This document shows, one piece after another, positions 20,605-45,310 of a stretch of 64,000 nucleotides of DNA (its first letter is position 1; each line of letters begins with the position of its first letter). The notes beneath the pieces are model-generated. The model made no database searches. It worked only from the letters and a program-made list of their open reading frames with translations, and was not told the origin of the DNA. A program made the position numbers and the translations under genes. Origin of the DNA: Phallusia mammillata (taxonomy: Eukaryota); contig OZ281496.1 of the NCBI GenBank assembly GCA_965637545.1, forward strand, positions 24,614,001-24,678,000, given 5' to 3'.

Positions 20605-23600
20605 TTATGTTTTCAGGCGCTGCTGCGCGTCGGAGAGAAAACTTGTCTGCTCCATTGCGTCGGGATTCTCGTCACGATTCTCGTCACGTGATCGCTGCAC
20701 AGCGGTGGTCACGTGAGCGTCCTTGGCACCCAGCCCAATACCCAGATTGCGCAATTCCTCTTCAATAAGAGGATCAACGTCATCGTCATAGTTCCTAACA
20801 AAGCAGGTAAAGTTAAAGTTTGCAAAACGTTATAGAATATACTGACATCGCCCGTTTCTTACATATCGAATGAGCCCTGCTCGTTGGCTTGTTCCTCCGC
20901 CACCAGGATTTCGTATTCATCCGCGGCAAACTTTTCCCAATCACTAGGCTCCGCTACAATTGAGTCTACGTCCTGCATTACAACCAAATCGTTAAAGTAA
21001 CTCATCTTTCAGTTTGCAATCAATTCTTTGGTTTTCCTTTGACAACTCTTTTTACCACGTTATGTTCAGTTTGACATTTTACGAAAAAGTCCGAATACAA
21101 TGTAATAAATGCAGTGATAGATTGACTTGTAATTGCTTAACGATCTGAAATGCCTAAATCGAAATTTTACCTTCTGTGGAGCAAACGGATCTTTTTGTTC
21201 ATGATCAAGGTACTTTTCAACGTTAAAGAAAGTGTCAAAGAATACGTTCGCCATTTTGCAATTCTTGAGGTCCTTCAACGTTATACGGTCGCGATGCAGG
21301 GGTTTTACCATGTCCAGCATCTGCAAAAGAAAGTTGTGTTGTTATATCCCTTGTACCATTTTGCAAGTTTTTCTTCAATGTAAACAAATCTTGGTAATTT
21401 TTTTATAAATTAACGGTAGGCACTACAGTATGAGATTGAACTTAGATCGTTAAGTTTTTCCCCTGGTGAACATGTGGCAAGTTACAACTGGCATGGCCTT
21501 GCACTAAGTTTGTTCAGTTGCAGTTGGTGTACAGTTGAAGTTGACTTGGTGTTAACTTTGAATGTGTATTCAACATCAACTAATATATATTTGTGTTTAT
21601 TAATTATCAGTTTCTAATTCTATTTTTATTAGTTTATAGTAGCAATAAAACATTTCGCGTTCGAAAATAAGGCAATTAAAAAGGGAATTCGCGCTACTTT
21701 TTCTGATCTTACCTGGCACACGCAATCTTCAAACGGTAGTGGTTCAATATCGAGCTGCTCAAGTTTTCTCATTTGCTCTTCGTAGAAAAATTCCATCTCG
21801 TACATAGAGATCACACCATCCCCGTCCAAATCCATGCATCGAAACCAGTACTCGAGGCTGTGAAAGCGAAAAAAAATGTGAAAAACAAAACAAAATATAT
21901 CAAGAGGCCACGAAAATGATAAAAATATAAGCAAAGTCTTGTCAATGCGCACAGGCAAAATTTAACCAAATTACCGAAACGTTAAATTAAAACAAATTAT
22001 GTGACTCGAACTTGAACTTTGGTTAAGACATTACTGACAATCATTAGATCACGTCAAAATGCATCTCCGGTTAACCTAACATATTTCCATTTTTTTAACT
22101 TCATCAACAGGACATTGACAAAGATTAAATCAAAACCAACGATTGTCATGTACTTCACCCAGGAAGACCTTTAATCATAAAGGCACATGGGCTTATCGCT
22201 TCAGTTTAATGCTGCCTACTATCATCCAGGAATTTTTTTAAACGATGCTATCGCAGCGGTAAGTACCTCGTGCTGGATTTTTTGTCTTCTTCGGATATGA
22301 GGAACCACACAAAATCAACGTACGACATTTTTCCGTTGCGATGATCCGAACTGTCCCACCGCGTAACGGCGCCACAGAGTACTCGGTCGATGAGCCGACT
22401 GGAGAGTGCTGCAAAGTTTGTTGACAACAGCGTTACAGGAAGTGACTCTTTCGCAGCGCTCGGCTGCTCGCAAGCCAAAACAAAGGTGTGTGTCGTACGG
22501 CCATGCGCCACACGAAATTAGAAAAATATGCCAAAATACTTGAAAAGAACTTAGTTGTGATTTTGCATTTTTGACCGGTGAGGTTTAATGTAACTTTTTT
22601 GTAATATACCACAATGGGTGTATGTGTTCATAGGTTGGATTAACAAGATCTATGTGACCATTGCTTTTGCGTCAGCAGTACTTAAACTTAGCTAAAAATG
22701 TGTCAAACTGTGTCGTGTATCAAAAGATTGGTAAACCAAATCACCGTAACAAGCAGTTCCTTGCTTAGGTTGAGGACTTGAATAGCAATTTGATCAAATT
22801 TAATTTGACAGAGTTTGTATATAGTAATACTTTTGCACTGATGCTGACAACAGATTGTTGAAACGATTGCATTCAAATGTATCCACTATATACAAACTCT
22901 TTGACAGTTTTCTCTTTGATCGGTTTCGGGTTTATTTATATTTATTATCTGATTTTGATAGACCTTAGTTTTTTATCAACCTGAAAATTGCGGCCAAATT
23001 TATCAATTTCGAAATGTTTTTGGTTTTAAACCGACTTTTCTTTGTGTAATTATTGCTTTCATACCAGAGAAATAATTAAAACGTCTCGAATTATGGTCTC
23101 TACTTAACGAGTCACGATGCTTAACGAAATATTTTGTTTTGTGTGGCAACATGTTTTTGAAAGGTGTATTGAAGAATGTCGAATATGAGATTACAAAATT
23201 TGTCTCAAAATATTTGTTCCTTTGATTCGGCCTGATCGTTTTAAAGCAGTTCCTTCATATCTGGTCACACATACGGTTTCCGCTCGAATTGTTTTAAAGC
23301 AGGTACGGTAGGTCACAAGTTTAAGTCATGATTCGTTACGCGGATATAATACGAAGAATTCGGCGGTTCGCGAACTGTTTTGTCAACTTTCTTGAAAGAT
23401 ACACTACTAAAATTATTTCAAAATATTTCAAAATATATTATTTCAAAACACTTAAATTCCACGAATCATTTTTGTATTACAAACACCGTCACATGCAACT
23501 GGTTCGTACAGTCGGTTGCGATCCTACAGCAGAGTATACACAGAACACAGAACTCAATCATTATTCTAATAGCTGAGCCATTGACCCTAGAACCCACGTT

Positions 23601-26600
23601 TTACGGCGTCCTTGCTGTTTTAGGTTACTGTTCAATGACAATGTGTGTAATGATAATGAAAATAAAAATAAACTTGACTTGTTACAGGTGTAGTAAGCTG
23701 TCAACATAAACACCTACCTCCGTTAGCGTGTCGTGTAAGGTCAAGTTTATCGATGACAAGGTCATGGTCGGTATCCAATTCCCAGAACTTGCAGTAAACA
23801 ACATAAAAATGTTCGTATGAAAAGTATTCGGTGACCGCATTGATGTCTTCCTCTTCCTCCAAAGAGCTAAGTACCTATTGAAGAAAGATAAAATATTACA
23901 GTTCAATGATATGGTGTAGAGTTTTGTTCGGAAATCCAGGGCCTTGATCTTTTCGATGCCACCTATGTTAGAGTTGACTAAGTGTCTTGTGATAAACAAT
24001 CAAATCATATTTATAATCATTTTTTTTACAAATAATACAAATATCATTTGTACAAATAGTACAAATAATCATTTTTTTCCTTGTGACCTTATTGGTCGAA
24101 ACAGCGCACTGTCTGCAGCTTACTTATGATTTATACATTGTTTTCTACTTTGCAACTTCGATTATTTTAAAAGCATTATTTGCATTAAGAGCAGTTGTGA
24201 ATTCGTATTTTGTTGTGACTAATTTAAATTAAATTTGTAAGGGGTATGTAGGAATGAAACTTACCGTTAGAAAGTTGCTTCGTCTAAGTTCAGACACAGT
24301 GATTTGACCCGACCAAGATCGGTTAACGACGTAGAAAATACGCGCAATAACCTGAAAACACAACAATTGCGATTAACAAGGTTGATCAGCTAAGCCGAGT
24401 CAGTACTCAATTAATTGTAGGTATACCGAGCATCATCATTTTCAATACTTTTACAGTAAAGCACTTTGACCAACGATCCTGACAACCTATGACGATCTAC
24501 GTTTATTTCCCTTTTGAAAGCAAGTTTTGTAGGCCACGAAGAGTAAAAGACGGAAACAGAAAAATTTTTGAGCAGAAAATATAGCAACAAAGCAATGTCT
24601 ACTTTACAAATTTGTGACGTCAAAAAGCAAAGTAGGCCCGGTTGAGCATCAAACGTTAACATGTGATGATGGGTGCTCAGCCAAAGTGAATACTTGCAGT
24701 TCTTAACATTCCCAAAACAAAGCACAGTTCAGCTATTTCAAGATTACAATAAGTTGGCATTTCCGTAAGACACATACAGCACAAAACAAGTCCTGATTTT
24801 ATTGATTTTAAAATATCCATAAAACGCAGTGGCTTCCTTTTGGCACTTTAAATAGCCTAAACGCAGTGTCACCATGGCTTAGTTTCAATGCACTCCAACT
24901 TACAGTGTTCATGTAACGTGTGTGGAACTCTGGGGCTTCTCGAAGAAAGGTCAAGCCTGGATGGCATTCCACGATGTCCTAAAACACCAGTTACATAACT
25001 ATGATGTAAATATTTTTCATGTTTAAAACGTCAACAGATTAGGATCTAAGTTTGGAAGTTGGTACATTTAAAAAAGGTTACTTAAATATATTGGCGTGTA
25101 TGTATAAATAAATTATTTCAAGTGCCGCAGAAATACACAACTATAGATTTTCAAATGCGAAGCGAAATATTTGGTTTTTATTGAGTCATTTTGTGCTTTC
25201 GCCGAAATAATAGTATACAAGATAATGCTAGAACCTCATTTTAATCTTAATTGTTCCCCAAAACACCTTTACCATCTAGTCAAATCTGAAATTAAATCAG
25301 TTGAACAAATCCTTGTGTTAGTCTGTAAAGTGTGACGTAAAAAATACTTTGTGAGTTGCAACAGGTTTTAAAGTATAAGAATCACAGGCTTATAAGAGCT
25401 TTCAGACCCGTGAATCGTGTGTTTGAGCATCGAAAACTTCGACTGCAATAAACTCTTGCAACATTAAAGAGAATATTATGTTCTAATATCGTAATATGTC
25501 ACCTGCATTAGACACAGGAAATCATCGAACTCGAGAAAGTTGTTTCCAGGCTTGGCAAGCATCTTCACAAAGCGAGAGGCGTCATCGTGGTTGGACTTGG
25601 CTAACCTAAATCCGGGTCGATAGAATTAATTTGTTTTTGCCAGCGAAACCCAAGCCAGCGTGTTGATCAAGTGTAAACGGATTGCATAAATCTCACAATT
25701 GATATTAAGGATAATAACCAATAGATTATGTATCAATAGGTTTAAATGCGTTGATACAGTACGAATGGGCGTCCATATGTAATTAGATTTAACGGGAATA
25801 TATTAGTGTGGAATATTTCGGTTATGACGTCACACACGTACCTGCTCCACATAGCTATGACGTCACTTTTGGACACGGTGTCCGCATCGCTTTTCGTGGC
25901 CGCTTTAAAGAACGCTGCTTTCCAGTATTCGCTGTATCCGCAGGACTAATACAAAAAATATGTATTAAACAAAGAAACACTTTATGTGACCAAGACAAAA
26001 CATGCTAAATTTTCGATGAACTGGACAGAACTGAATAGACTATCGAACTCAAAGCGGGCGGATTTCAGGTGGAAAATATGTTTAAGAAAACGTTTTTTGA
26101 ATCCTGACGAGAAAAATTACATAGCACCGACAAACAATTGTTACCATTGCAGTTCGTACGGAATTAGGTCCAAAACTTATATATCAATTTTGTGTTTTAA
26201 AAGTATAGTGTTTTCATACGTACCAGTATTATTGAGCCGAGTTCACGCCTGGTCACACGATCCTTTCCGATCTTTCCAAACGCCTCGGAGATTTTCGTTA
26301 AAGTAGATTTAATCTCGTCTGAAAGTAGACATAAGAAAACAAAGTCAGAAAAGGCACTGCTTCGGGCCTTGAAAAGTGTCACACCCTGGATTTATATCAA
26401 CCTAACACCATCAAAGTTAAATGTCTGGTCTCTTTCGTAAAGTATAAGCCATTTACTAGTGTTGCAGAATTTTAAATAAAACTAAACGCAAACTTTTACC
26501 ACCCAATAAGTTTTGCCTTACGGTGGAAATACTAAAGCTAAAGCGAAGTTGGAAATTACTGGTCGATCCTCGTTCGAACTTTTTATTGATTTCAGGCTCT

Positions 26601-29600
26601 TGTTCAATTTTCCATGGGAAAATCTATCGAATTACCCTTGTCAACCAAGTATGGGACAACTGACGTTCAAAACAGCGAAGAGGGCTGTCAATCCGTCCTT
26701 AATTTATCGATAAACAAGAGCATGTAGGAAACACCAAGTAAATTTACTGAACTAAGACATTTTGTACATGTCCCGCTGTAATGTACGTGCCATAATCTAT
26801 CCAACTGGCTTCTTAAACCACAAGGATAGAATGCAAATTCAGGGTGTGTCTGCAATCCGCATATGTGTCTGCAGCCTTACCTGTGGGACGCGGTTGACCA
26901 CAAGGGAAATAGAAACGTGGTATTCTGGAACTAACATCGTTCTCGCGTTTTGCGGGTTTCTCGATCACGGGTGAGCCAGTGTTGGAACCAGGAATCTGAA
27001 AACAAAGCACATTGAATTCAGTAACACTTACATGATTTTCAGTTTAACGGTTTGACACGATGGTTGAGATTGGATTGGTTAAATGTTTTTAAGCGGAGTG
27101 GGCAAACAGAACTAATATTAGTTTAAAATCTGCTCAGGGATAAACAAAAACAATACTCCAGACCTATTGAAGTCGTTGTAATGAATCAAGCCGCGCACCA
27201 AGCGTTTTCATATAACAAGACATATGTTGGAAAATCTAGATTGTGGTAGGATTCGATCCCACGACTGAAGCTTATCCGGACAAAAAGTAAACAAGCAAAG
27301 AAGGTTGAAAAACCCATGCTATCGAGATATTTTATCCCCAAAACTGCAAAAAGTGCTCAAACCGTGTTATGACTAGTTTCATTGGAATTTGTTGATTTGT
27401 TTACAACTTGAATTCAGTTTAAAGTGTTGCTGCTAAACTTTTAGTCTTAAGTCACTTTTTTCACACAAGCTAATTAATCAATTCAGACAATGCACCAAAC
27501 CGCCTTCGCTGGCAAAGCGAAATTCTGCTGCCACATTGTTCTAAAAAATGACACATCGCCTTCTTAACCCGGAAACAATCGGCAGCCAAGACGAGTATTG
27601 CGAAACTAACAACAAAACTTGGCCTGGTTGTCCAGGAAATGCTTATGCTACTTTGTAGGTATGTTTGCAGAATAAGAATGTTTGCAATTTGGTTTTGTAC
27701 CTCAAAATATTAACAAAGGAAATTTGTTGGGGGTCCAAAAATCCTGCTTGCAACGGCCTACAACTCCCAATATGAATTCAACTAAGTCAAAACCATATGT
27801 GTAGCATATTATATAATCACGAGTTACCAGTGATTATATTTGAATAAAATACTTAAATACCTATCACTTGGTGAAATATCTTAAATAAACGGTGGATGAT
27901 TTCAAACTTTTTCAGTCTATAAGTCAAACTTTTGGCTAAATGATAGAATTATAAATAAAACAAAGGGTATATTGGTACTTTAAACTGTTTAAAAAGTTTA
28001 TTTAAATGAAATTTCTACATACATAACTTAACATTAGAACATGTGTACATACTAGAAGTACAGAGTATTATCCACAATAGATTTCAATGACGCATTAGAG
28101 CATGAAAACAATCACAGACAGAAACCGTAATGCGATTTTGATAATCTCTCATTGCTCGCTGATCTATAACGCGAAAGCACAATAACAATATTGTGGTAAA
28201 TTACGTTAGATTGCCTTTTGGTTCACCCCACAGCCGTTGGCGCTGCGATGGTGTTTTGATAAACAATAACCTGCCGCTGCTGCTCTAATTAATTGAATAT
28301 TTATGCAGCTGCGAATACCAGCCGTGCACTGCGGCGGGTGTTGTAGGTAAAATTAAAATCCAATTTGTTTATTGGCGTGTTATTGGAATTTGCGTTGGTT
28401 ATGTTTAACGCACATAGAATGTGAAGCATTTATAGTTGTTTCATATTGTTATTTCTTGTAAACTACAAGTACCCCTAACACAGATTTTTTATTTCTAACA
28501 TAAAAAAGGTCCATTTCAACCGAGTGAAAACCATCAATCAATACCTTAAAGAAAATACAATAGAATTTCATCATAAATATCAACCCACAAAAACTGCAGC
28601 AAAAAATGTTTAGTCCACTTTCAGGAACATCCCACAATTTGTGGTCGTAATTAAATATGGTAGTATGTCTACGAATAACCAGACATTGGTTGTGTGCATC
28701 AATTTTAATTTTGCTAATCCAAGTTTTTGGAAGTCACAAACTTTGCAATCAAGTAATAGTGACATAAAGAGTCACAACTGTACTCAAAAGCCTATCTGTC
28801 CTCCTATTGACGGAACTCACCTCAGGAAACCGGTAAGCAAAGTCTTCGATAAACTTCTTGTTATCAAGGCTTTCAAGAACTGAGAGTCTCATGTTGAACT
28901 ATTCACAGACAAGCCACTATCATTTGAATAGTAAATACTAAAGTATACGCTGTATGTATAAGACAGATACAAAGTGAGCAACAAAACTCGGGATAGAGAA
29001 GTACAAGGTTAAACAAACCTACATCACCAGGGCTGAAAATTTTACCTGTTCAAAGCTAACATTGATAAAGATAACAACCACGTTTCAAGTGGGTTCATAA
29101 GCGCAGTGCTGTTAACTGAAAGTACTTGCAAGCGCTCGTAACAACATATACCCGTTGAACATTGAGGGCTTGAAACACTTCGCCGCAATTAACAACACAC
29201 GGCGCATTTATAAGTAAAACATAGGCGTTCCAAACACATCAAAAATATAACTATTATACAGTTTATGTACATACAATTCAAAATCTCTAAAACTGACTGA
29301 CACGGACATTCCACTCACTTGCCCTCGCAAATATGTTAACATTGAAACGCATGCACTTGTTCACTTTAAACCGCGACTCAAACTAGTGTGTACAGTCTGG
29401 AAACACAGTGCTCAAATGAAATGGCAAGCGCGTGTGCCGACGATTATCCACCGGGCCAACAGCTTGGCGGGATCACCGGCCTGTACTCCAAAAGAGAGTT
29501 ACGACAACAGTGGGTTGGCAGATCCATTATCCAACGGCGGATTATCATTACATGAACTCGTTCAACATCCTGAACTTTCTTTGTGAAACCAGGGTCAATT

Positions 29601-32600
29601 CATCTTTGGTCTGCTACTTAATCAGGCGCTTAAAAGGTAAAAAAATCGTTCTACGGTGTTATTGAGGAAACATGGCACATCGCTGCTTAACGTCAGTTCT
29701 ACTTAATTTTAACGCACAATTCGCCAGAAGATATAGACCGATAAGAAACGCGTAAGATAACAACAGCGTATTTGACCTTTGCATGTTCGCGACATTTAAA
29801 TTGACTTCTATACGCCTCTAGAACGTCAATAAAAGACAAATGCTAAATTTAAACATGACAAACTTCTCATTAGCAATAAAGTCGATCTTTCACATACGTA
29901 AAGGTTTCTGCTTCGCTTTAATCTAAGTATAGATTTAATGGCAGCACGTTTATCTCATCATCTCGTTTGCAAGTAGTATAAGCTTAACCAATATCGCAGC
30001 GTTAACACTACCTCATCAGTTTAAAAATCCATACATTTGGTTCGTAAAATGGTAACTGGTTGATCTGAAGATCTAAACCTTAAAGCAAATACTCATAGCA
30101 GGCGAAGTTCTAATCCCAATACCACTGCAACCCAGCAACGCATTCTGAATTGACAACCCAGTCAACTTGCTAGACTACCAACCCGGCTTGTGGGTCAATA
30201 ACGGTCACTTAAGAAGCGGTAGAGTTTGAAGATAAATACATGCGACGTATAGGAAACGACAGAATGTAAGTAAACGACGCAAGCGGTCTGTACGTTCGAC
30301 CATTCATAAGCAGGTTGTTTCGTCTTAAAGTTTGGCGGTACGCGGAATGCCAACTGCCGTGGGATGAATACAATTTGCTTTCGAAGTAATGACGCTTGTA
30401 CCCATAGCCGCTGGGTTTTATGAATTGGCAATGGGTGTCTGAGCTGGCGGGACCCACATCTCGCAAATGTGAGTGGGAAGATAGTATTGCTACGTCATTA
30501 GTTTCAACCACGTGATTACGCGTTTCCGGTCCTGCGTGACGTCACCAACTGTAATGTATAGCAATCGATATGCTAGCGCAACACCTGTCCGAATGACAAG
30601 GCACCAGCGTATGTCGACGACATGCACGATGTGATGAATGTATTGCGCGCATTATGCAAAAAGGACAACAACACATGGTCGGGCTACGGACGTGGACATG
30701 ACCACACTAAGTCAACGCATTAAGTTTCATACTATCACACTACAGTACTTTTGATGTATAGTTAAGAACGTGATTTTGCACGTTGATTTACAGGCAAAAC
30801 CGTGTAACCATCTCAATGTTTTTAATTGTGAATGAATGCCAAACCCGTTAAACTAAAACGTTGATCACACGCACGGTTTTGGCATTCATCGACACATAAA
30901 AACATTCGGATGCTTAACACGGCATTGCACTGTTTGTTTTTGGGCGCGAAAAGTCAAATGTCTCGCATTTATTGTTAAATTCCGCGACAGTACTCCTTAA
31001 ATATTTCCTAACACGGATTTCTGGAGAAAACATTCACGGAATTTTTAGATACGCTTATAAATATCTTCGAAGTAACAGGAATGAATCAGCCATTACCTTT
31101 CCTTATGAGACCTTCCGTGTATGAATTAACATTTAGCGCAAAGTTTATCATGGAGTGACCCCGCCCGGGCACTGACCTCAGACGTCACTGGATATTGGAA
31201 TCAGCGCTGATTGGCTGATTCGTGACATGACGTACGAGTTCCTGGTCTCAAAGCTTTACAAATCGGAAAGGCTTCAATTTAAGAAAAGCAGTTTAGATAA
31301 ACCGCATGTGTATGAAATATAGCCAGCCATGGGCCTGTATAAGTCTTTGTTTAAGTTCAGGTGTCAATTATTGAACTGAAAACCAACGTTTTCGCTAAAA
31401 ATGGTTCGCGCATTCCGCTTTCAAAATGTTTTTTTTTAATCCATTGGCAGGCAGTTAATTGCCCTGGGTACGTGTACATTACATGATCAAAAACTGTCCT
31501 AATCATGCAGAAAACATGGAGGTTCGGGTTGACGATCAGTCGATAACAAAATGATATTTTCCTGTTTATCCCAATTTTTACGATTTTAAAAGAACGTCTG
31601 GCTATTCCCACACAAATGTTATGCTGTACACATAGTATATCGTACAAACATTACGTGGTAATATCACAACATTCGGTTTCATCTCATGTGAAAACAGGAA
31701 CAAAACACATGTTATTAGCCGGTTTTGCGTCATTTCAAACAACAGGAATCGTCCGAAATACAATGCGTTGCGCAATTATAATTACATTAGACTCAAACGG
31801 AACCATGTTCCGGAAAAACTATGAATATGCTTCAGAATTCATTTGGTAAACACAAAGGAAGACCAAATTCCTTTATTAGACCAAATACCAATACGCGTTG
31901 ATTAGGACGCAAAAATAGTGTGTACATCATAAGGTCCTAAATGCTGCTTGTTTTACCAATAAGCAGCAAATAAAACCACGTTATCAATCCACTACCGAAT
32001 AGCCGTTAGTGGTATTGGTACTTCCACAAAAAAGTAACAAATCTACGTCAACATGGGACCCAGTAACGACCGCCGACCTTAAATTATTCATCAACTCAGC
32101 AAGGCTGGAAAATGTCACCAAATCGCTGCTACGATTTGGGATGAAACAAAAGGACTTGACTGATTGGCCCAGGGGAATTATGGATAAGTTTATGAAATTT
32201 AACAAATCGTATTGATTTGACAGTATGGGGCTTGTGTTTAGGAAAATGTGGGATTTTGGGGAAAGAGAAATCTATACACTTCAAATTGGCGGCTTTTTTC
32301 TGCACAAAGCGATGCAATTGAGACGAAGAAATACTAATGTCGTTAGGCACAAATAGAATTGCAACATCTGTCAAGATTTAAGAACTCAGAAATGGGGCAA
32401 ATTTTTGTACACACTGCCTGGTGATGATTACAAGACACGATAAAATACAACATGATGATTATTGGTGTACTTTTCTGATTCGCATATCATTGCCAATCGA
32501 ACAACTATTTGCATTACGGTAGGTCATGTATTAACTTTTTCACAAACACTTCAGCCACTTTAGGTTGCAACTTCAATCTGTTTATTCGAGATATCTAAAA

Positions 32601-35600
32601 TTTGGATTGAAAATCAATGTTTAAAGATACACATTACCTTTTGCCAATAGTTATCAACAACGTAAAACCAACAAAATACGTTGTATTCATCAAACTATAT
32701 TGAAATGCTTCCCTATAATTTTAGAATATGTGCACAAGCGCTTCAAAATCGGGTGAAAATGAAAACACTTTTCAGACACACAAATTGCACTGCTGTCGCG
32801 AGCATTATGCGTTACTGGGCCGACATTTCGTCGCGGAGGGTATTCGTAATTAGTGTAGTAAATAATGAGGCCACGTGCAAGAACTACGTTGTGGCTGCTG
32901 CAGATGATTGCGTTTTGAGTCAGAGTTTAAGCACGACGCTTTAGTGACGGCAAAGTATTGTTTTGCGTATCTGCCAACGCACTGGCCAAAAATTATCATG
33001 CCAATGTTGCCATACCGACCTTATTTCTAAGATTTGTCATTATTTTAAAGGGCAATGTTTTAGAAAAATATATTGTCCTTATTTCTAGGAAATGTCCTTG
33101 ATTTTGACGTGAGTGCTTATTTTGTCTTATTACAAGTCAAATCCCTGCTACAAGTAAAAGTAAACCTAGGCTTGGGCTGTCGTGAGATGCACAAAGTATT
33201 TTCTACGAACAAGAAGTTGGTGGAACAGATTGTTTCAGGCAAAAAATACGACATGTGATAAAAATTTGTTAAAAAAAGTTTGTTTCGTTTCGTATGTAAT
33301 GTTAATATTTCGGTTGTCCTTATTTTGGGCTCCATGTCGATGGCAACCCTGTATATACAATGTTTTTGATTAAATTACTTTTTAATTCCGTGTATAGTGT
33401 TCCAAAATGCATAAAAACCTAACGTTTGCCGATGGCGTTTGCTGTGGTGCAAACATCGTATTTCACTCAATCAAAAAAAAACAAAAGATGCCACATGAAC
33501 AATAGTTGTCGGAGGCCCCTTGTCTCATCACAATAAAACATATTTAAAAAAAACATCAAGTTATCAGCTGGTGTTTTTGTTTACTTCTTTAAACCTTCAC
33601 TCAAATCAGATTTGTTACCTTAAACAAGCAACTTGCCAAAAATTAACAATACAAACAACATCATCGAACAATAATGCTATTTTCTTGTTTTATCACTCCA
33701 AGTTAGCATTCTGAAAAGAAGTATTACTGTGCTAGTGTACAGCTGCAATCCTGTTGTAACCTACCTAAGAGACATAGTGTATTGCGACTGTGCAATCCTG
33801 TGACAAAACAAGTAGTTTGTTGATCATTGACAGTAACCTTTGGGACTTGAAAACCAAACAGCTGCATCTACTACAAAACATCTACTCGGCTGCCAATGTA
33901 CATTGCCCACTAACATTAACAGAAAAACGTTGCTCAAAGGTAAATAGTTACTACCTGTTCTGGTACTTCACAAAACAAAAAACAAGCGGCGCAAATTACT
34001 GGGTTTTGATTGCTTCCTAACTGCCGGGGAGTTTAAACAATTGTGCAGGCTTTCTGAGATTTAACGACTTTGCAAATGTGTTTGCAGTGAAATGGTTTAA
34101 ACCAACTAAGAAACGCACATGTACTGAACTGAAGCTTTCAGTACACTTAAATCAGTATGTGTTGTTCGTTATGCAATGTATGACATAAAAATCGATTTTG
34201 TCGATGGCGTCCTCCAAACCACAAATAAAAAATAAGTTCAGGCTATAAATGTGCAGTAAGCGCGCATTGGTTCAGGACGATTTCTGTATAAGCACAGTTT
34301 TTACAACTAAGAAACGTTTGTACTGATAATAAACTAAACTAATCCTTATCAGCAAAAAGGAGACAATAAAAAAATATTGACTGCCATATGAAAACGTTTT
34401 TTAAGTGTCTAAAAAGTTTAAAGGCATCAGACATGATAATCTAGTTTCACACCACTTACAACAAGATCTTACAGGACAACAATTGTTTGGCAATAGTCTA
34501 TTTTCAATTAGAATAAACGCGACCTTTTGAAATCAATCTTGTATATGTATATGTTTATTATGTACCCGATAAACATCAAAAAGCGACCGCAATCGGTTTA
34601 ACGCATACAACTTAAGACCCGTCAATCCAGTTTTGAAATATTACACCTGTAAAGTGCAACTTCACATGCCGGATGTTTTACAAAGCACAGGCAATTTGTC
34701 AAAAGGCCATCGAGAGTCACTCATTATTTATAGTTATGGCATGGCGTTTTATAGATGACAATTTACGTTTACCGCTATTCGCGACCACCTGTACCTAAAG
34801 GCCAAAAGCTAAAAGGTGCTACACAGAAACAAGACGGTTTAGAATTAATAGGAAGTCAAGCCACGAACACTGGGATCGTTGGAACTGAAATACACGTCGT
34901 TGCATTTCGTTTTAAAAGATGCAATTTGCTCTTATCATCCAATGACGTGGCAAAACCAACATACAGTCGCGTTTGAGAGACTTGTAAGTGCTTGTATGTA
35001 TTAAGGCAATGAGTAGGGCTTGCTTCGTGCACTTTGTGCTATTTAGACAAGGCATCAATCAGCCGTTTCAGCAGCTAGCAATATTGAACAACTACGCTTA
35101 AAAAATCATTCATCATTAAATACTTGGATGTATAAAAATGATTGTTAAACTTCTCTTCCTTAATTTAAAATTTTTACAACAAAACCGTAACGCTTTAAAC
35201 GACATATATAACTCCTATTCTATGGACCAATCTACTGCCTTGTTATTTGTACACGATTTATATTATATACATGGATAGGCCATGTGACAGTGCTAAGCAA
35301 GTTAGGACATTTAAAGTGCGTCACGTAGACCATGTGTACACAAGCTGTACAACATATCCTCTTGTTTTCGTTATCGTCCGCCGTGCTGCGAGAGGTACAT
35401 GCAAAAGCATTTCCTTGGGTATAGCTCGTGCAAACAAAGCTGTACAAATCAATGACTTGTGGTCCCAAAGGATTCTTGCAGTAGGGGCAAAATCAATTTT
35501 CTCGTGCAAAGACGCACACATAAACCGTGATGACAGAGAATTAAACACCGGCTTGTAATAACCGGATATTGTAAGTGGGCTAGAAAACCCGAAGCGGTTT

Positions 35601-38600
35601 CTACAGTTAAACCTGAAACTAAAGATGTGTTTCAAGAAAAACATTTCCGCAACGAAAATAGACCACTTGCCATATGTGTCAGCAATTTCTAGAGTTCACC
35701 ATACTTCCTATCCGCAAATACCATAACAACCTTAACGTTTAGAATACATTTAAGTGTTGGCAATGGTCGTGGCATTTCAAACACATGCAATCCAACTTAT
35801 AGTCAGCCTCTTAATTTGCAGAGATCATTTTACACCCACCTGCATTCTGTCATCAGTACGCATTGAGTTAAAGTCGTCGGTAGTTACAGCAGTACTCTCT
35901 GATATTTTACGAGATTCTTTTGACTGATTGTCTGATGTAGGAACATCCTCAGCGACTACAACCTGTACATCCGGAACAAACTTGTTCACTTGTTCAGGCG
36001 GCTTTTCATTTGCCTTATCGTTCGATTTGTAGAGTTCTGAATCGGAATTAATGGCCAACTTGTCCGTGCATGGTTTTCGTTCCGTGACTTCGATTTGCAG
36101 AGGTATGCGTTGCCCTGCACCAGTAAAGAAGTCGGTAACTGTCTCATCGTATTCTCCATCGCCCATTGAAGGAATTCTTAGAACTTTATGGAAATTAACA
36201 GGATCACTGGCAAACCTACACTGATATGAAGCAATATCGTCGGCAGTAAGCATCTTTGAACAGCTTGTCATAACGTCTACTTCAGTGCTGGCCATTGCAG
36301 AGCAGTGGCTCTTTGTCTCATCGCTATGCACAACGGCACGTCCGGCGTGCTCGCCTTTCTCTGAGGTCTTTTCATCTAAACGCTGATTGCTCTCTTGCGA
36401 CACCGCATGGCATATTGTGGAAACATTATTGTCTGGTGTAGACTTGGTTGTAGAATCACCGCCGTGAGGTATTAGTTTGTCAAGATTGCTGTTGGAGGCT
36501 GTAAAAGTAGCACTTTTTATAACGTCACTGCTCATGTCACTGCTCTCGCTTCCTTTGCGTGACGTAGATGCCTGTCTAATTTTCGGGGTTTCTTTTGGCT
36601 CGACAGATATTTTGGCTTCAGTTTGTTTACCCTGATCAGACCAGTCTGCTTTTGCAAAGTTGATCACTTTCATGTCAGCGGGTGGCGAATGAATATTCGG
36701 CTGAAACTTAACGTACTCGTGCCTATGTTCTTTGTGGGCGTTGCCCGCTGGTGGTGTCACGCCCTTAAGCTTCCGTAAAATACAATCCCGCGCGAGTTTC
36801 TTTTTTACGTCCTCGGAAGCTTTTAACGTTTGTCCCTCCATTGCAGCGTATTGCTCAGTTCTTACGGTGCGCCTTGGTGCAGCGCCTAAATGAATAACAG
36901 TATTGGAGACAGTGGAGGCAAGGCGCTGGCTGTTTATGTTTGATGACGACGCCGTTGATGATTTAAGGTGCGTAGTTGGTTTCTGTGCCTGTGACGGTGT
37001 ATCTGTTTCCGGCCGTGAGCCACGCGAAATCAGCTGGCCAGTCTTTGGAAGTACCACACGCACCACCAGCGGCGCTCTTTGCTCATAAGCACCCTTGTCT
37101 AAAGTTTTGGTGGTTTTGTGACCTATCACTTGACTTTGAATAGATATTGGTACATTACGATGGGAAACAGTAGATTTGTTACACGCAATATGCTTGTTGT
37201 TGTTGAGATCTGCTGACCCCAGGTCACAGTTTAATTCAGCGTGTTTCGTGACACAGTTTTTTTGCGTCGCAGCGTGGCCAATCAATCGAGGCGATGACAA
37301 ATCTGTTGCTCGTGACCTGCTTTCTAGGGTCATCGCGGGGCTGTTTGGGGGGAATACCAACTTGACCGAACTCCGGTAACGCGTATCACAGCCCTCTTGA
37401 TCGCCTTCTTGGACCATTGCGTGAGGTGGTTTGTTCATCATGTTGTTATTATTTAAACCTACGGGCGAAGTGCCATTGCATTCCAACTGGTCGTAGGCGC
37501 TGTGACTGACAGCTTTACTGTTCGACATGGTGACGCTATGTGACGTCACGCGCTGCTGATGCATTGAGGTTCGCTGAAGGTCACGGGTGACAGTCACGTG
37601 ACTAGCAGATGCGCCGAAAGCAGAGCGGAACAGCGCACGTCTGTGGGTTTGAGAATTTGAACCAACAGAGATGGGCAACACATCATCCACCTCCTGTAGC
37701 ATCTTACGTCGCAGTGCCTGCACCACCACGAGGCGACTGCGGGTCTTGCGCATGCGCAGTTCGCTGTGCGACATGTCACGTGACATATCCGCACACAACA
37801 AAAACAAAATGCCCTATTGCACCAACAGCTCAATCACAAAGCAACAGAATACATCAGTTTCGCAAGTCATAAACATACGTTAGCCCTGAAAGAAAACGTA
37901 GGTGAATTCATAAACAACCATACCGAAACCTTTTCTAACACTGTAAAAGGTGAAGGCAGAACGCATGAAAATTTAGCTTATACCCTCGAAACACTTCAAA
38001 TCTCCTGCTCTACTAAAGACACGATATGACTATCTGCGCAATAGCAGTGTTAAGCTATTGTCTATGACCTATGCCAAAATCGTTTACTGTTCCAGGGGAT
38101 TTTGGGTTTATGCGTCAATTACTAATGTAACAGTACCAGACACAACTTCCTCAACTAAAGAGTTTTCCAACTTATCTCAATCTCTTCCAGGCTGAGCTCA
38201 TATCAATTGCTGCTGTAATGAGTATTAAACCGTAAGGAACGATTGGCTTAACCTTAATGGACTGTCCTTCATGCTTGACAAATAGCAGACACTTGAAGAC
38301 TCTCTGACCGGTATGCTTCAACGTACATAGCCTTATCAACGCTTAGCGATGTGCGAATGCGATAATCAGTCTCTCAGTCGTCGAGCGGAGGCACGAAAAT
38401 AAATGCACCAAGAAGAAGGCCTGTCAATTCCCCTGGTAGTCATGCCAAAGGGTACTAGGGTGCCTATCGTAGTGCTGCTGATATGGCCTGAATACCTAAG
38501 TGCCTGACAGTTGCACGCAGAGCGAAATCGTTGATTAGAAAACAGCAGACGTGCCTTTGGTTCAACGAGGAGGCGCATGAAGCCGCCTGCTCACGTTTTG

Positions 38601-40531
38601 GAATGGATTGACGACGCACGCATGCCACGCGCGATATTTAGTCCATTAAAGCGACATCACCTTTTAAAATATTTATGACATTCTGAGAAATTAAGGAAGA
38701 CAGCAAAGTACACAGGTTTGTTAAAGTGTAACAATATCCACAGACTTGGTATATCCCCTCCTGAAATAATACAGGTGGATACATTTACATTCAAACACCC
38801 AAACCAACTAAGCCTGGCAGTTTATAGCACAAACAACAATATACTGTCAACTGTCAAGGATATAAACCAACATCAAGATAAAACCTTTACTGTTCTTTCA
38901 CTAAAAACTTTGATTGTGTTCAAACAAGAGACCAAATGTCAATCAAAGAACTACATAGGAGCATCCAAATGTTAAAGAAAATGCTATGACATTCTACTCT
39001 AGAAATGCTGTTGTACCACCAGAAAGCCCAAAGATCAAACCAATATAACCACAAAAACTCACAACAAAGAACACTTTTATTTTAAGTCGCTCAGCTAGTG
39101 CTATGTTTTCAATAATTGGACCTGGTTTAAAATATTTGGAAAAACTCTGAATCATATTTATCACAAAATTTGAAACATAAAAATATATGACAGATTCACA
39201 AACCCTTTTCGAGCTCTTTACAAATTGAGCAAATAGACCTGGTATGGACAAACACCAAGCCATGCAATTTGTTACCGGACCATACACAAGAAAAAAACAC
39301 ATAGGTGCTTTTCACTACTACCAACCTCAAGGAAAATACATCTATTTGAACATAAAAAAAACGAAATGCAAAGTTTTACCTTCAAGTTGCCTGATAATCT
39401 TCCTTTTCCTTGGGATCTTCTTCTGGGGCTAAGTAGTGGTTTTACATTACTAGATGTTGAAGGACTAGATTTTGTGTTGTTGTTTAGGGTGGCAGTTTGT
39501 GGTACAACAGCTCCTTTATTTGTTGGACTTCCTTTATTGGAGATTTTTGTCAGATTAGCCTGCTGGCTCCTAAAAGCATGTGTGTTTATTGCAATAGAAA
39601 ATATGTGTTGAGGTGCATGTAAACAATGAGTGATTAATATAACTTACTGTTCAGTTTTGTGTTGTCTTATTTGTCTAAGGCCTTCTTTTAATGCTTTTTG
39701 AGTTCCTGGTAAGTTAAACCATCTGAAAAAAAAAAATCATACTGCTGTAGTTTTCACCATAAAAATACTGGTACTTTTATTGCTAGACAGCAATCATTAT
39801 ATGGCATACGCAGATCACCGGGACTATTACTTTATTGACACAAAGTATTGGGTCCAAGTTAATGATTTGTTCTTGAACCGAAAATACAAACAGCATTTGG
39901 TTGGTATGCACTTGAACAAAAGTTGGATCAACTAATTAGTTCTTTTGACTGCACCAAAACTCAAAAATCATGATTCTGCCAGCGCTTCTCAAGAAAACAT
40001 CTTAACTACTTACAACAATTAGAAAAAAGTGAAATGAGGTAATATACACAGGGCATAACACTTCCATTCCTCATTGCCAAAACTTCATTGGAGTTTAATT
40101 GATATTAAGTACAAACAAAGAGCTTTATGAGTACAATAAAACAAAACAGTGTGAATGCATTGTCATCAAACAGTCTGTTCAAAAATTATGTTCATGTTTA
40201 TTCTTGTTCTTGATGGCCACAGATTTGTGCAATGCTTAAAAGTATACATATGTAAACTATGCAACATTGAAATTTTATAATAGTTATGTCAGTTTGATAA
40301 GGGGCAAAAGTAAAGTTAATAATTATCTAAGCCTATTTAAAAACGTTTTTACCAGAAGTTAGCAGCTGCTACATACTTTAACAATGTGAAGATGATTAAA
40401 TAAACACAAGTATTATACCTTACGAATAGTTCATCCACTTTAACATTTATATCTGGTCTGAGATATCCTTCCTTTTCGGTTTTATCCCGTTTTAATCTCG
40501 TCTTTGACCCGCTCTTGCGCTTTTCCGACAT
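20605..40531 (-). CDS. PPP2R3: PP2A regulatory subunit B'' (PR70/PR72 family, EF-hand), PR70-type isoform of about 616 aa
   Basis: Exons in transcription order: 40531-40419, 39722-39648, 39569-39380, 26995-26881, 26318-26224, 25945-25842, 25605-25503, 24978-24904, 24351-24265, 23874-23718, 22408-22267, 21857-21713, 21320-21171, 20972-20863, 20794-20605 (1851 nt, in frame). Family motifs [55 protein letters not shown]-hand [12 protein letters not shown]. Confidence 0.93.
28821..28892 (-). CDS. PPP2R3: Candidate short alternative first exon of PPP2R3 ([24 protein letters not shown])
   Basis: ATG at 28892 with an AG acceptor 6 nt upstream; strong phase-0 donor GAG|GTGAGT, compatible with the phase-0 acceptor at 26995. 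Confidence 0.45.
31145..31240. promoter_or_regulatory. Cluster of promoter-like motifs inside PPP2R3 intron 3
   Basis: CCCCGCCC (GC box), GACGTCA and TGACGTA (CRE-like) and CTGATTGGCTG (CCAAT box) within about 100 bp of otherwise AT-rich DNA. Motif match only. Confidence 0.3.
35840..37786 (-). CDS. PPP2R3: Giant (649-codon) alternative exon of PPP2R3, low-complexity S/T-rich, PR130-like in size
   Basis: About 2-kb ORF inside PPP2R3 intron 3 on the same strand; ends MQ|GTGGGT with a phase-0 donor at 35839, and the ORF stops four codons later; in frame with the shared exon at 26995. Confidence 0.7.
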
Positions 40532-41614: not shown

Positions 41615-44164
41615 TTAGAGACGCTTTTTAATGAGTTTCTCTAGCTTTCGAATCCGTGAAGTTGAATCACTGTCAAATGATGCATTTGCATTTGAAGTTT
41701 TGCTGCCCCCTGATACTGGCATTTGGTTGCGGAAAACATCCATTATAGCACTCTGTTCAACTCTTCTCAGGCCTTTCATTTCAAGAATTTTCTGGAACAT
41801 ATCAATGTCTGGGTCTACAAGTAGACGGATGCAGCTGGAAACAAATGCTGAGTTTGGTTCATGGGGTGTCATTACTACTTTTAGGAGCATTTCAGCTTTG
41901 GTCATTCCTTTCACAACAATTTTGGTGTAAGATGATGGGGCCTTTCTTGCAACCTGAGATGATATCGATGGCAGTTCCAGCAGAATTGTTTTCAGTGAAT
42001 GGGTGTCCAATAACAGCTGTTCTGCCCCTACTGTGCCTATTGGCTTGCACTTGTAGAGTGAACTGATAAACCTAGGAATGAATGAGTTTGCAAATTTGAT
42101 ACAGAATTGAGTGAAGTACTTTCTAGCTTCAGCTAAATTTGCCCGAACATGTGGTACTGCTTGTTTGATGTGTGAAGTAATTGCTGTAACATATGCGCTT
42201 TGATCCCCAACATGCTCCATTGATGTCCAAGATATTTTGGCCATTGCAGTTAGGGGAGGATCACATGCTGATTCAAGATCTTGTTCAAGCAGTTGAATAC
42301 AATTTGATATCACACTGCTAAATACAGTTCTCTCCTCAGACAAATCAATTTGTGGGGACAAATTGGTGTCAACTTTTTCTTTGAGCTTTATCTCCAGTTG
42401 CTGTGTTGTTTCTAAGCAGTAATCTGCTGTAGTAAGTATCGAGCAAATTAGTGTTAGTTCACCTGAACCAAGACGAACTGCCTCAGAGGAGGAACCATCC
42501 TTTAAACTGGATGTGGTTTCCTTAAGTAGATTGGTAACAGTTGAAAATGTAATGTTAGCACTAAGAGACACTGTTGACTGAGACGTCTTAGGCAGATTGC
42601 TTGTCAAAATTCTTGATGCATATTCTCGAAGATACTTTTGAAAAAGCTTTGCTAAAGCCAGCATTGGTTCACCAGTGCTTAGTTGAGAACACTGAACCAT
42701 GCATTTTTTGTAGTACACAAATAAATCAGCACAGTTGTTAAGTACCCCACCCTCATGAGGTACAGTGTCTGTTCTCATCTGTTGGCTCTTTTTCTGAAAT
42801 TCCTCCTGAAATTTAGCCATTAGCTCAGATAGGTTTTGATCCTGTGATTCAATATAGATGTACAGGTAGGGCTCAAAACAGTTTGAAATCAGTCTTTGAA
42901 ATGGATTTTCTGTACGCTGACTTACATCATTTGTTTCATTAGCTTCTTCTGTTTCGTTGCTGTTATTTCCATTGCCTTCATCTTCTAAAAATGGGTTGGT
43001 GTTGGCTTGATCAACTGGTTTTTGTTCTTTGCTATTTGAAACCTTCTTGACATTTTTACTGGATTGTCTTAAAGTGTTCCCAGATAGTCTCTTAGACAGC
43101 AGAGTTTCAAAGTTGGTAGTGCGCTGTATTGCAAATAACAGCAGCTTTACATCAATTTCACTCGCTCTCCTTTGCATTAATGTACTGAGCTCTCTGTTGG
43201 TAATTTGACAAAATTCCACAGCTATTAATTCTGAAACTTCCCAGTGTTCTGGAAAAATCTTGGACAGTTTACCTTCAAATTCAACCAAAACCCGTTTTAC
43301 CCAAGCATACCTTCTGTCAATTTTATCAAGCCATGCTACATCCTGTGAAGCATCAAACAGAACCAAGTATTCTGAAAGTTGATTCTTGATGAACTTCTTT
43401 AACAGCTCTTTCTTGACAATTGGAGAAAGTGCATCTGCCACTGCACATGCCTCATGCAGTAACTTGGTATTAATGCCACTCTTTGGATTGCCTCCAGGTT
43501 GTGTGGAAAATGCCATGTCAAATTCAGCAAGCACAAGTTGTGTCATTTCTTGCTTAATCTCATCTACACTAGCAGAGAGTTCACGAACTGTTGGGATAGA
43601 CTTGTACTTGCTAAATTGTTCCATGACATTTAGTACTCCTTGCAATAGACTTGCAGCCTCGCCAAACTGGCGTTTATGAGCCAAATTACGCAATGTGTCA
43701 ACACCACTCATTAACATATGCAAATGATTGTGCGTTGTTATTGCTTGTGTAAGGTTCCGCTTTGCTTGATCAAGCTGTTTTATGTCTCTTGTTATTTCCT
43801 TAACCATTTGCTCAGACTGATCAGCACGGTCCTTGATGTTTTTAATTTTGGCAAAGAGTTCATGAATAGCCAACTGGGCTTCTTCTAAGGCTTGTTGTCC
43901 ATCCACACCAGCAGTGGTCTGCTTACGCACAGCAGTTTTTATGTCATGATCCAGGTGTTTTATTTTTCCCTCAACCTTTGCAACAACATCATCAATACTG
44001 GCTAGCGATTGCTCAGTTGGAAAAAGGTTGTTGATGTAATCTACTACATTAAAATTGGGTTGCTCAAGTGGATCAGAACTAGGAAAAACATTTCCCAAGA
44101 CAGACTGCACATCATCAGCAAAGTGCAGTATATCATTTTGTGCACTGTTTTCATTAGACTCCAT
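41615..44164 (-). CDS. VPS53: Vacuolar protein sorting 53 (GARP/EARP subunit), 849 aa, single coding exon
   Basis: Continuous ORF with VPS53 motifs [58 protein letters not shown] and C-terminal [13 protein letters not shown]. Confidence 0.97.
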
Positions 44165-45310
44165 TAAAATGTTTTGGTAATGTATCTATGACATACTTCT
44201 AAAAATCACATAGAACAAATATAAAACAATGTAAACTTATTATGTTTTACAGTATAAACAAAATATCAAAGTTTAAACGCTGCAAGAGTGCAACAGCAAC
44301 TGATGCAAACAAAGTTACGTTTTACACATCACGTTGTAGGACAATTTGTGGTTATATACCATTGCACTGTGCAGAAAAGTGCAGCCCTCAAGCTTAAGCA
44401 TAAACAATGTAACAAACAAAAATTCTTTCGATAGACATAATTCTATATTTAAACTATAACTCTACAAAAATTTAGCTGACCTGAAACTGTATCTTAATCT
44501 TACCAGTTGACTTCGTCAATCGTCACGCTTTTTACACACATAGAAACAGTAAACAATAATCGGCATAGAAATCATACAAATCTGTACCTATTTTTTAAAA
44601 AACGCACGTTTTCACAACTATCAAAACTTTCGAAACGTTAAAAATGACAGTTTAAAACAACCAAAATTGTTTTTAAAAAATACACAAACCTTTAAATAGT
44701 CTGTTGGCATACTATCACCAAGCGTAGCAAAATTTTCGCTTACTTTCAATGAGATGCAGTTAAGGATGATTGCTGATTTATGATAATGACCTCAAATTCT
44801 TTCCAGCTTTGCAATAATTGTAAATTGTTAATAAAAGCAACAAGTAATACTAGCTTCTTGCTTTCAATACGTCGCTAGTGATCACCTGTTTAGGCGTATT
44901 GTTAAATCATCTCATAAAATCTAATGGTTACGACTTCGCTTGTGTATGTATATTTAAAATGTTATTCTTTAAACAGTCTCCCCTGCGAGAAAACAGATTT
45001 GGTTTTCACGTGTGTACATTTCAGACAAACTTTAGTGCACGATTTAAGGCCAGCGTTTCGATACAAATAAATAAAAGCGCAATAAATAAAAGGTCACAGT
45101 CAAAAGCAAGCTGTAGCGTCCGGCCTATAACCGTAACATGACGTAGAAAAGGTTAAACGATTGTAGCGTACAAACAGTCAAGTTGCATTGTTTGTGTATA
45201 TGCGACCATGAACTCTTTACAACAAGAAGTATAATAAATAAAATACTGGTTCAACGAACATGTGCAAAATCCAACAAAAGTGAACTATACAACGTACACA
45301 ATCATTACTG

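What the first reader, a model, noticed from the sequence alone, without database searches (positions are those of the whole stretch)
26881..40531. One PP2A B'' locus appears to encode PR70-, PR130- and PR72-type isoforms that vertebrates split between two genes
Seen: exons 1-3 encode [20 protein letters not shown] and end in phase 0. The following intron holds a 649-codon exon and a 24-codon exon, each with a phase-0 donor matching the shared exon at 26995. Predicted products are about 616, 1139 and 514 aa. Known (from memory): vertebrate PPP2R3B/PR70 has the KVDELF N-terminus, whereas PPP2R3A makes PR130 (about 1150 aa, with a roughly 660-aa unique N-terminus from one large exon) and PR72 (about 530 aa). 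Inference: the ancestral chordate gene may have carried all three starts, later partitioned between duplicates. The alternative is convergent gain of a giant disordered exon, since I see no sequence similarity to PR130. An in-frame AG at 37815-37814 would also allow cassette inclusion.
Basis: partly seen in the sequence, partly recalled or inferred. Interest (0 to 1): 0.7.

Follow-up and report, generated by a model that had tools for sequence, protein, structure and literature searches.

The report
Tunicate PP2A B'' gene, long alternative start
[quoted passage not shown] That exon would give a PR130-sized long isoform, but it has no detectable sequence relationship to vertebrate PR130 and I could obtain no RNA evidence.

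Summary
The minus strand holds exons 1-3 (126 codons, KVDELF-type start, ending in phase 0), a 649-codon ORF with a phase-0 donor after 35840, a 24-codon ATG-to-donor stretch at 28892-28821, and the shared IPRFYFP exon at 26995. The core is 490 codons, so the products of 616, 1139 and 514 aa check out.

The large exon is real coding sequence. A second species keeps it in the same intron, with the same neighbouring genes. Silent sites between the two species are saturated, yet protein islands are conserved: 14 synonymous against 2 non-synonymous changes in residues 17-40. Conservation begins exactly at the ATG. The best donor in the whole ORF sits in phase 0, five codons before the stop.

Three parts of the reading did not hold up:
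- **24-codon exon:** it is not conserved, and such candidates turn up by chance once or twice per intron.
- **Cassette inclusion:** the in-frame acceptor is not conserved.
- **PR130 homology:** a profile search of 1.84 billion proteins found only the sister-species ORF.

The verdict is a PR130-like architecture, probably gained within this lineage or diverged beyond recognition. The ancestral three-start model is unsupported.

The parts
40419..40531 (-). Exon 1 coding part (ATG 40531; 37 codons + 2 nt), MSEKRK...[14 protein letters not shown](R)
   Evidence: Read directly. Matches the sister locus L001 1647-1790 by tblastn, and 85% DNA identity over 41 nt.
39648..39722 (-). Exon 2 (75 nt), (R)[24 protein letters not shown]
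   Evidence: Read directly. 78% amino-acid and 80% DNA identity to L001 2018-2111.
39380..39569 (-). Exon 3 (190 nt), Ser/Thr/Asn-rich linker, ends AAG|gtaaa in phase 0
   Evidence: Read directly. The sister exon at L001 3807-4031 also ends AAG|gtaaa in phase 0.
37787..37885 (-). Putative 5' UTR of the long form, behind a strong 3' splice site (ttctttcag|G at 37886|37885); holds 3 upstream ATGs
   Evidence: Such strong acceptors are rare, 4 in 16.4 kb of intron across the two species. One lies 99 nt (window) and one 113 nt (L001 9887|9888) upstream of the ATG. Its use is inferred.
35840..37786 (-). 649-codon alternative first coding exon (ATG 37786, donor CAG|gtgggt after 35840, phase 0); predicted disordered with short conserved helices and motifs
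   Evidence: No stops in frame. Conserved islands under purifying selection. It has the best donor of the ORF, 5 codons before the stop. Mean pLDDT is 33.
28821..28892 (-). 24-codon ATG-to-donor stretch ([24 protein letters not shown]|gtgagt); probably not an exon
   Evidence: The donor is perfect, but there is no counterpart in the sister intron. Equivalent chance candidates occur 1-2 times per intron.
26881..26995 (-). First common exon (115 nt), [38 protein letters not shown], phase-0 acceptor
   Evidence: The sister exon has the same phases.
20605..26318 (-). B'' core exons 26318-26224, 25945-25842, 25605-25503, 24978-24904, 24351-24265, 23874-23718, 22408-22267, 21857-21713, 21320-21171, 20972-20863 and 20794-20608, plus the TAA stop
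   Evidence: The exons match the sister locus at 57-93% amino-acid identity. Splice sites and phases are consistent and the 1470-nt core has no stop. Pfam EF-hand_13, P2R3B_EF-hand and EF hands match. PDB PR72 and PR70 match at E 1e-17 to 1e-22.

Best explanation
This is the only B'' alpha/beta-type (PPP2R3A/B-like) PP2A regulatory-subunit gene of a tunicate genome, and it most likely makes two proteins that differ only at the N-terminus.

The short form (616 aa) starts in exon 1, with a KVDELF-type start. Exon 3 splices across a 12.4-kb intron to the IPRFYFP exon at 26995.

The long form (about 1139 aa) starts at the ATG at 37786 of a 649-codon exon inside that intron. This exon encodes an intrinsically disordered region with a few conserved helices or short motifs. 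Its phase-0 donor after 35840 joins the same common exon.

Splicing any upstream coding exon onto the strong acceptor at 37886 runs into a stop within a few codons. The long form therefore probably needs its own transcription start inside intron 3. The unpaired acceptor would then take a spliced leader, or a non-coding first exon.

Shown here: the ORF, its conservation and purifying selection, its position, the splice signals and their phases. Inferred: transcription, the junction to the core, the internal start and trans-splicing. The extension would act as an isoform-specific targeting or scaffolding arm, as is accepted for the vertebrate PR130 N-terminus; that is analogy only.
For: - **Open frame:** the ORF has 0 stops, against 22-48 in the other frames. 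Its GC content (48%) equals that of the core exons and is well above the roughly 37% of the surrounding introns.
- **Conserved position:** a sister-species contig has the same order, Vps53, exon 1, exon 2, exon 3, big ORF, IPRFYFP exon, core. The introns themselves cannot be aligned.
- **Purifying selection:** silent sites are saturated (pS 0.76), while residues 17-40 show 14 synonymous and 2 non-synonymous changes (pN 0.037). Further islands lie at RxRSSV, PLVVxVVLP, KKxxARxxI and MASTEVDV...VTDFF.
- **Start codon:** conservation begins exactly at the ATG.
- **Donor:** the best donor of the whole ORF (8/9 to consensus) is in phase 0, 5 codons before the stop. The sister ORF has phase-0 donors at codons 803 and 811.
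- **No 3' end signal:** no AATAAA or ATTAAA within 800 nt after the stop.
- **Upstream acceptor:** a rare strong acceptor lies about 100 nt upstream of the ATG in both species.
- **Family trait:** alternative first exons joined in phase 0 to the first common exon are the rule in mouse Ppp2r3a and Ppp2r3d (PMC2529318).
- **Single copy:** one copy of the ORF and one B'' locus in the genome.
Against:
- No protein in the databases joins the exon to a B'' core.
- The sister-species donors are only 6/9 to consensus.
- The window's putative 5' UTR holds 3 upstream ATGs.
- Only two species support the exon.
Confidence: 0.62

Rival explanations
1. The 649-codon ORF is an independent, single-exon orphan gene nested in intron 3 on the same strand. 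It ends at its own stop (35827-35825) and never joins the B'' core.
For: No database protein joins it to the core. The ORF has its own conserved ATG. Vertebrates make core-less PR130 N-terminal products, namely Xenopus XN73 and mouse alpha3 (PMC2529318).
Against: - The tails after the candidate donors differ completely: 5 codons in the window against about 60 hydrophobic read-through codons in the sister species.
- There is no poly(A) signal within 800 nt in the window.
- The best donor of the ORF lies in the one phase that fits the common exon, just before the stop.
- Position and strand within the same intron are conserved.
Confidence: 0.2
2. The large exon is the true orthologue of the vertebrate PR130 exon. 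The ancestral chordate gene had PR70-, PR130- and PR72-type starts, which were later divided between PPP2R3A and PPP2R3B.
For: - It has the same architecture as mouse Ppp2r3a exon 1: one exon of about 650 codons, a phase-0 donor, and a junction to the exon that carries IPRFYFP.
- The order, long exon and then the common exon, is the same.
- The core is equidistant from alpha and beta.
- Disordered regions lose detectable similarity quickly: the two tunicates themselves are only 30% identical.
Against: - No similarity to any protein beyond the sister species among 1.84 billion representatives, and nothing in the ESM Atlas.
- The PR72-type exon is unsupported.
- No outgroup was examined.
Confidence: 0.12
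3. The large exon is used as a cassette between exon 3 and the common exon, through the AG at 37815-37814. The product of about 1274 aa would carry both N-termini.
For: The AG is in frame and exon 3 ends in phase 0.
Against: - The AG is part of the in-frame TAG, and its pyrimidine tract is weak.
- The sister species has no AG between its upstream in-frame TAA (L001 9944) and the ATG.
- Joining exon 3 to the strong acceptors gives a stop after 1-2 codons in both species.
- Conservation starts at the ATG, not before it.
Confidence: 0.04

Closest known systems
Vertebrate PPP2R3A (PR130/B''alpha1 and PR72/B''alpha2)
   Same: One very large 5' exon supplies a unique N-terminus of about 650-665 aa. 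It joins in phase 0 to the first common exon, which carries IPRFYFP. The core exon sizes 104, 103, 75, 87 and 157 nt are identical, and 145+150 here equals 176+119 in mouse (PMC2529318 Table 1).
   Different: There is no detectable sequence similarity between the large exons. Here the large exon lies downstream of three KVDELF-type coding exons rather than being the first exon of the gene. No convincing PR72-type exon was found.
Vertebrate PPP2R3B / mouse Ppp2r3d (PR70, PR59 isoforms)
   Same: Alternative first exons are joined to a common core (PMC2529318). The KVDELF...W...LRxI start of exons 1-2 resembles the human PR70 N-terminus; this comparison is from my memory and was not tested. The core is as close to solved PR70 as to solved PR72.
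   Different: No PR70 or PR59 isoform with an extension of about 650 aa is described in that paper.
Xenopus XN73 / mouse PR130 alpha3
   Same: These are products made of the PR130-specific N-terminus plus a short tail, without the B'' core. Read-through past the donor here would give the large exon plus 5 residues (VGVK and stop).
   Different: This is purely hypothetical here. The tail is not conserved in the sister species.

Membership tests
PP2A B''/PR72 family, alpha/beta type (PPP2R3A/B) | B''-specific EF-hand region (Pfam EF-hand_13 PF17958; P2R3B_EF-hand PF21161) and a canonical Ca-binding EF hand | tested here: met
   PF17958 scores 40-42 bits against a cut-off of 22.6. PF21161 scores 26.2 bits on one exon alone, against a cut-off of 27. 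EF-hand_5 scores 26.4 against 25.9.
PP2A B''/PR72 family, alpha/beta type (PPP2R3A/B) | Sequence similarity to the solved PR72 and PR70 cores | tested here: met
   Two exons hit 4i5j (alpha), 4mew and 4i5l (beta) at E 1e-17 to 1e-22.
PP2A B''/PR72 family, alpha/beta type (PPP2R3A/B) | Conserved exon structure of the core | tested here: met
   Exon sizes 104, 103, 75, 87 and 157 nt are as in mouse Ppp2r3a.
PP2A B''/PR72 family, alpha/beta type (PPP2R3A/B) | Binding to the PP2A A/C core dimer | not testable with these tools
   This needs a pull-down. No complex prediction was run.
PR130-type long isoform | Unique N-terminus of about 650 aa from one large 5' exon, joined in phase 0 to the first common exon | tested here: met
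   The exon has 649 codons and the donor after 35840 is in phase 0. Mouse exon 1 ends ATCAAG|gt and joins ag|ATTCAA. The junction itself is inferred, not observed.
PR130-type long isoform | Sequence homology to the PR130-specific N-terminus | tested here: not met
   A two-sequence profile searched against 1.84 billion representatives returned only the sister-species ORF at E <= 0.001. Word-based searches also found only that ORF, or nothing. A direct profile-profile comparison with PR130 could not be run, because no PR130 sequence was within reach of the tools.
PR130-type long isoform | An mRNA that joins the large exon to the core | not testable with these tools
PR72-type short isoform | A short alternative first coding exon between the long exon and the common exon | tested here: inconclusive
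   A candidate exists at 28892-28821 with a perfect donor. It is not conserved, and its kind occurs by chance 1-2 times per intron.
PR70-type N-terminus | KVDELF-containing start | not tested
   The motif is present and conserved in both tunicates. The comparison with human PR70 rests on memory only.

The most novel reading that the evidence does not exclude
The 649-codon exon is the diverged orthologue of the vertebrate PR130 exon. A PR70-type start and a PR130-type start would then have coexisted in one pre-duplication chordate B'' gene, and were later partitioned between PPP2R3B and PPP2R3A. That would be a clean case of subfunctionalisation by division of alternative first exons.
Probability: 0.12. 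Interest if true: 0.65.

Novelty: new variant of a known kind. Interest (0 to 1): 0.4.

Why it matters
B'' subunits direct PP2A to its substrates through their variable N-termini. The origin of the PR130 arm, which vertebrates use in Wnt, EGFR and cardiac signalling, is not known.

A tunicate B'' gene with a conserved extension of PR130 size, at a comparable position in the gene and with the same junction phase, points one of two ways. Either long arms arise repeatedly at this phase-0 junction, or the arm is older than vertebrates. Both can be tested directly with cDNA and with outgroup genomes.

The conserved islands (residues 17-40, RxRSSV, PLVVx[12 protein letters not shown]...TDFF) are concrete candidates for docking motifs.

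Tried and rejected
- **Protein searches:** Pfam on the large exon found nothing. The ESM Atlas look-alike search gave only scores of 0.82 or less to unrelated disordered proteins.
- **Database searches for a joined product:** three word-based homologue searches were run, with the whole exon, the two-species profile and the C-terminal 200 aa, to catch transcript fragments across the junction. They found only the sister ORF or nothing.
- **More species:** a metagenome-contig scan returned only contigs of the same sister species.
- **Literature:** searches for invertebrate B'' long isoforms found nothing relevant.
- **Structure:** the AlphaFold2 model was too poor (mean pLDDT 33) to justify a fold search.
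- **Rejected readings:** cassette inclusion; the 24-codon exon as a PR72 counterpart; and a transposon or repeat origin for the ORF, because it is single copy.
- **Joined models:** the spliced proteins were not sent to any search or folding tool. The exons were searched one by one by reference. Only the joined lengths and stop counts were computed, in a script.
Full report
**What is in the sequence**

The gene lies on the minus strand.
- Exon 1 starts at ATG 40531 and ends at 40419. Exon 2 is 39722-39648 and exon 3 is 39569-39380. Together they give 378 nt, or 126 codons, reading MSEKRK...[35 protein letters not shown]..., and they end AAG|gtaaa in phase 0.
- The next intron holds one long ORF. 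Its first ATG is at 37786, and the sequence CAG|gtgggt places a phase-0 donor after 35840, which makes 649 codons.
- Further downstream, ATG 28892 opens 24 codons that end at a perfect donor, GAG|gtgagt, after 28821.
- The common exon 26995-26881 begins in phase 0 and reads IPGS...[15 protein letters not shown].

I delimited eleven further core exons by conservation and splice-site phase. The core comes to 1470 nt with no stop and ends in TAA.

**The core is a B'' alpha/beta-type subunit**

- Single exons match Pfam EF-hand_13 and P2R3B_EF-hand, and one carries a canonical EF hand.
- Single exons match the solved human B'' alpha (4i5j) and beta (4mew, 4i5l) chains about equally well, at E 1e-17 to 1e-22.
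- Exon sizes of 104, 103, 75, 87 and 157 nt are exactly those of mouse Ppp2r3a, and 145+150 nt here equals 176+119 nt there (PMC2529318 Table 1).
- Searches of the whole 240-Mb assembly with EF-hand_13 and with two core exons hit only this locus. It is the only gene of this type in the genome.
- Earlier notes of this scan call the genome a tunicate. I did not test that.

**The 649-codon exon is real coding sequence**

It has no stop in frame, against 22-48 in the other five frames. Its GC content is 48%, equal to the core exons, while the surrounding introns are about 37%.

A word-based search found one relative, P0001, an 868-aa ORF from host contigs in several metagenomes. Those contigs carry the complete orthologous locus in the same order and orientation: Vps53, exon 1, exon 2, exon 3, the large ORF, the IPRFYFP exon and then the core.

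The two species are far apart.
- The introns cannot be aligned at all.
- Synonymous sites in the large exon are saturated (pS 0.76).
- Even so, both species keep an open frame of 649 and more than 800 codons, and they share protein islands.
- Residues 17-40 ([24 protein letters not shown]) show 14 synonymous and only 2 non-synonymous differences (pN 0.037).
- Further islands are R[FY]RSSV, PLVVxVVLP, KKxxARxxI and MASTEVDV...VTDFF.
- DNA conservation begins exactly at the ATG, which marks it as the start codon.

AlphaFold2 predicts disorder, with mean pLDDT 33 and short helices only at 13-36, 46-57 and 325-340.

**Is the large exon joined to the core?**

The argument is therefore indirect.

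1. The ORF lies on the gene's strand, in the same intron, in both species.
2. The best donor-like site of the whole ORF in any phase (8 of 9 to consensus) is the phase-0 site after 35840. It is five codons before the stop, and phase 0 is the only phase that fits the common exon.
3. The sister ORF has phase-0 donors at codons 803 and 811. About 60 hydrophobic read-through codons follow, and they have no counterpart in the window.
4. No AATAAA or ATTAAA occurs within 800 nt after the stop.
5. Strong 3' splice sites are rare in these introns: 4 in 16.4 kb across the two species. One lies 99 nt upstream of the ATG in the window and one 113 nt upstream in the sister locus.

Joining exon 1, 2 or 3 to that acceptor gives a stop within a few codons. 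The long ORF can therefore only be translated from an mRNA whose 5' end lies in intron 3.

In Ciona, spliced-leader trans-splicing uses acceptors that have no upstream donor in the transcript (PMC1488885). An internal start followed by trans-splicing, or a non-coding first exon, is therefore my inferred mechanism.

Points against this reading:
- The window's 99-nt leader has three upstream ATGs, while the sister leader has none.
- No database protein, whole or fragmentary, joins the exon to a core.

**The 24-codon exon and the cassette idea**

The 24-codon stretch has no counterpart in the sister intron at either the protein or the DNA level. The same search rule finds one or two such candidates per intron in each species. 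I treat it as chance.

The in-frame AG at 37815-37814 is part of the upstream TAG stop. The sister species has no AG between its upstream in-frame TAA and the ATG. Cassette inclusion is therefore not conserved.

**Relation to PR130**

The architecture is similar. In mouse Ppp2r3a the PR130-specific exon 1 ends ATCAAG|gt and the first common exon begins ag|ATTCAA, a phase-0 junction ahead of IPRFYFP. Ppp2r3d and human PPP2R3B also use alternative first exons (PMC2529318).

Homology, however, is not detectable. A profile of the two tunicate sequences, searched with HMMER against 1.84 billion representative proteins, returned only P0001. The Atlas search gave nothing meaningful. No direct profile-profile test was run.

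The two tunicates are themselves only 30% identical in this exon, so this negative result cannot separate an independent gain from divergence beyond recognition. The resemblance of exons 1-2 to the human PR70 N-terminus rests on my memory only.

**Verdict**

The locus is a B'' gene with a conserved, previously undescribed long alternative N-terminal exon that is PR130-like in architecture. The three-start ancestral model is not supported as it stands.

The spliced protein models were not sent to any search or folding tool. The exons were handled one by one, by reference.

Noticed in passing
window 41618-44185 (-): A Vps53 homologue is encoded as a single uninterrupted frame of 856 codons, about 1.1 kb upstream of B'' exon 1. 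The sister species has the same intronless neighbour (846 aa, Pfam Vps53_N and VPS53_C), 81.5% identical over the 249 residues compared.
   Followed up: partly
window 37885-37886 and L001 9887-9888: Strong polypyrimidine-AG acceptors are rare in these introns. One lies about 100 nt upstream of the large exon's ATG in both species, which makes it a candidate spliced-leader trans-splice site.
   Followed up: partly
L001 12410-12607 (P0001 residues about 804-868): The database protein P0001 ends in about 60 hydrophobic residues that look like a membrane anchor. They are probably T-rich intron read through by an ORF caller, and they are absent from the window's ORF.
   Followed up: partly
window 37352-37369 and 37055-37081 (-): The short conserved islands R[FY]RSSV[KT]L (a basophilic-kinase or 14-3-3-like pattern) and PLVV[RH]VVLP lie within otherwise unalignable disordered sequence. 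They may be docking motifs.
   Followed up: no
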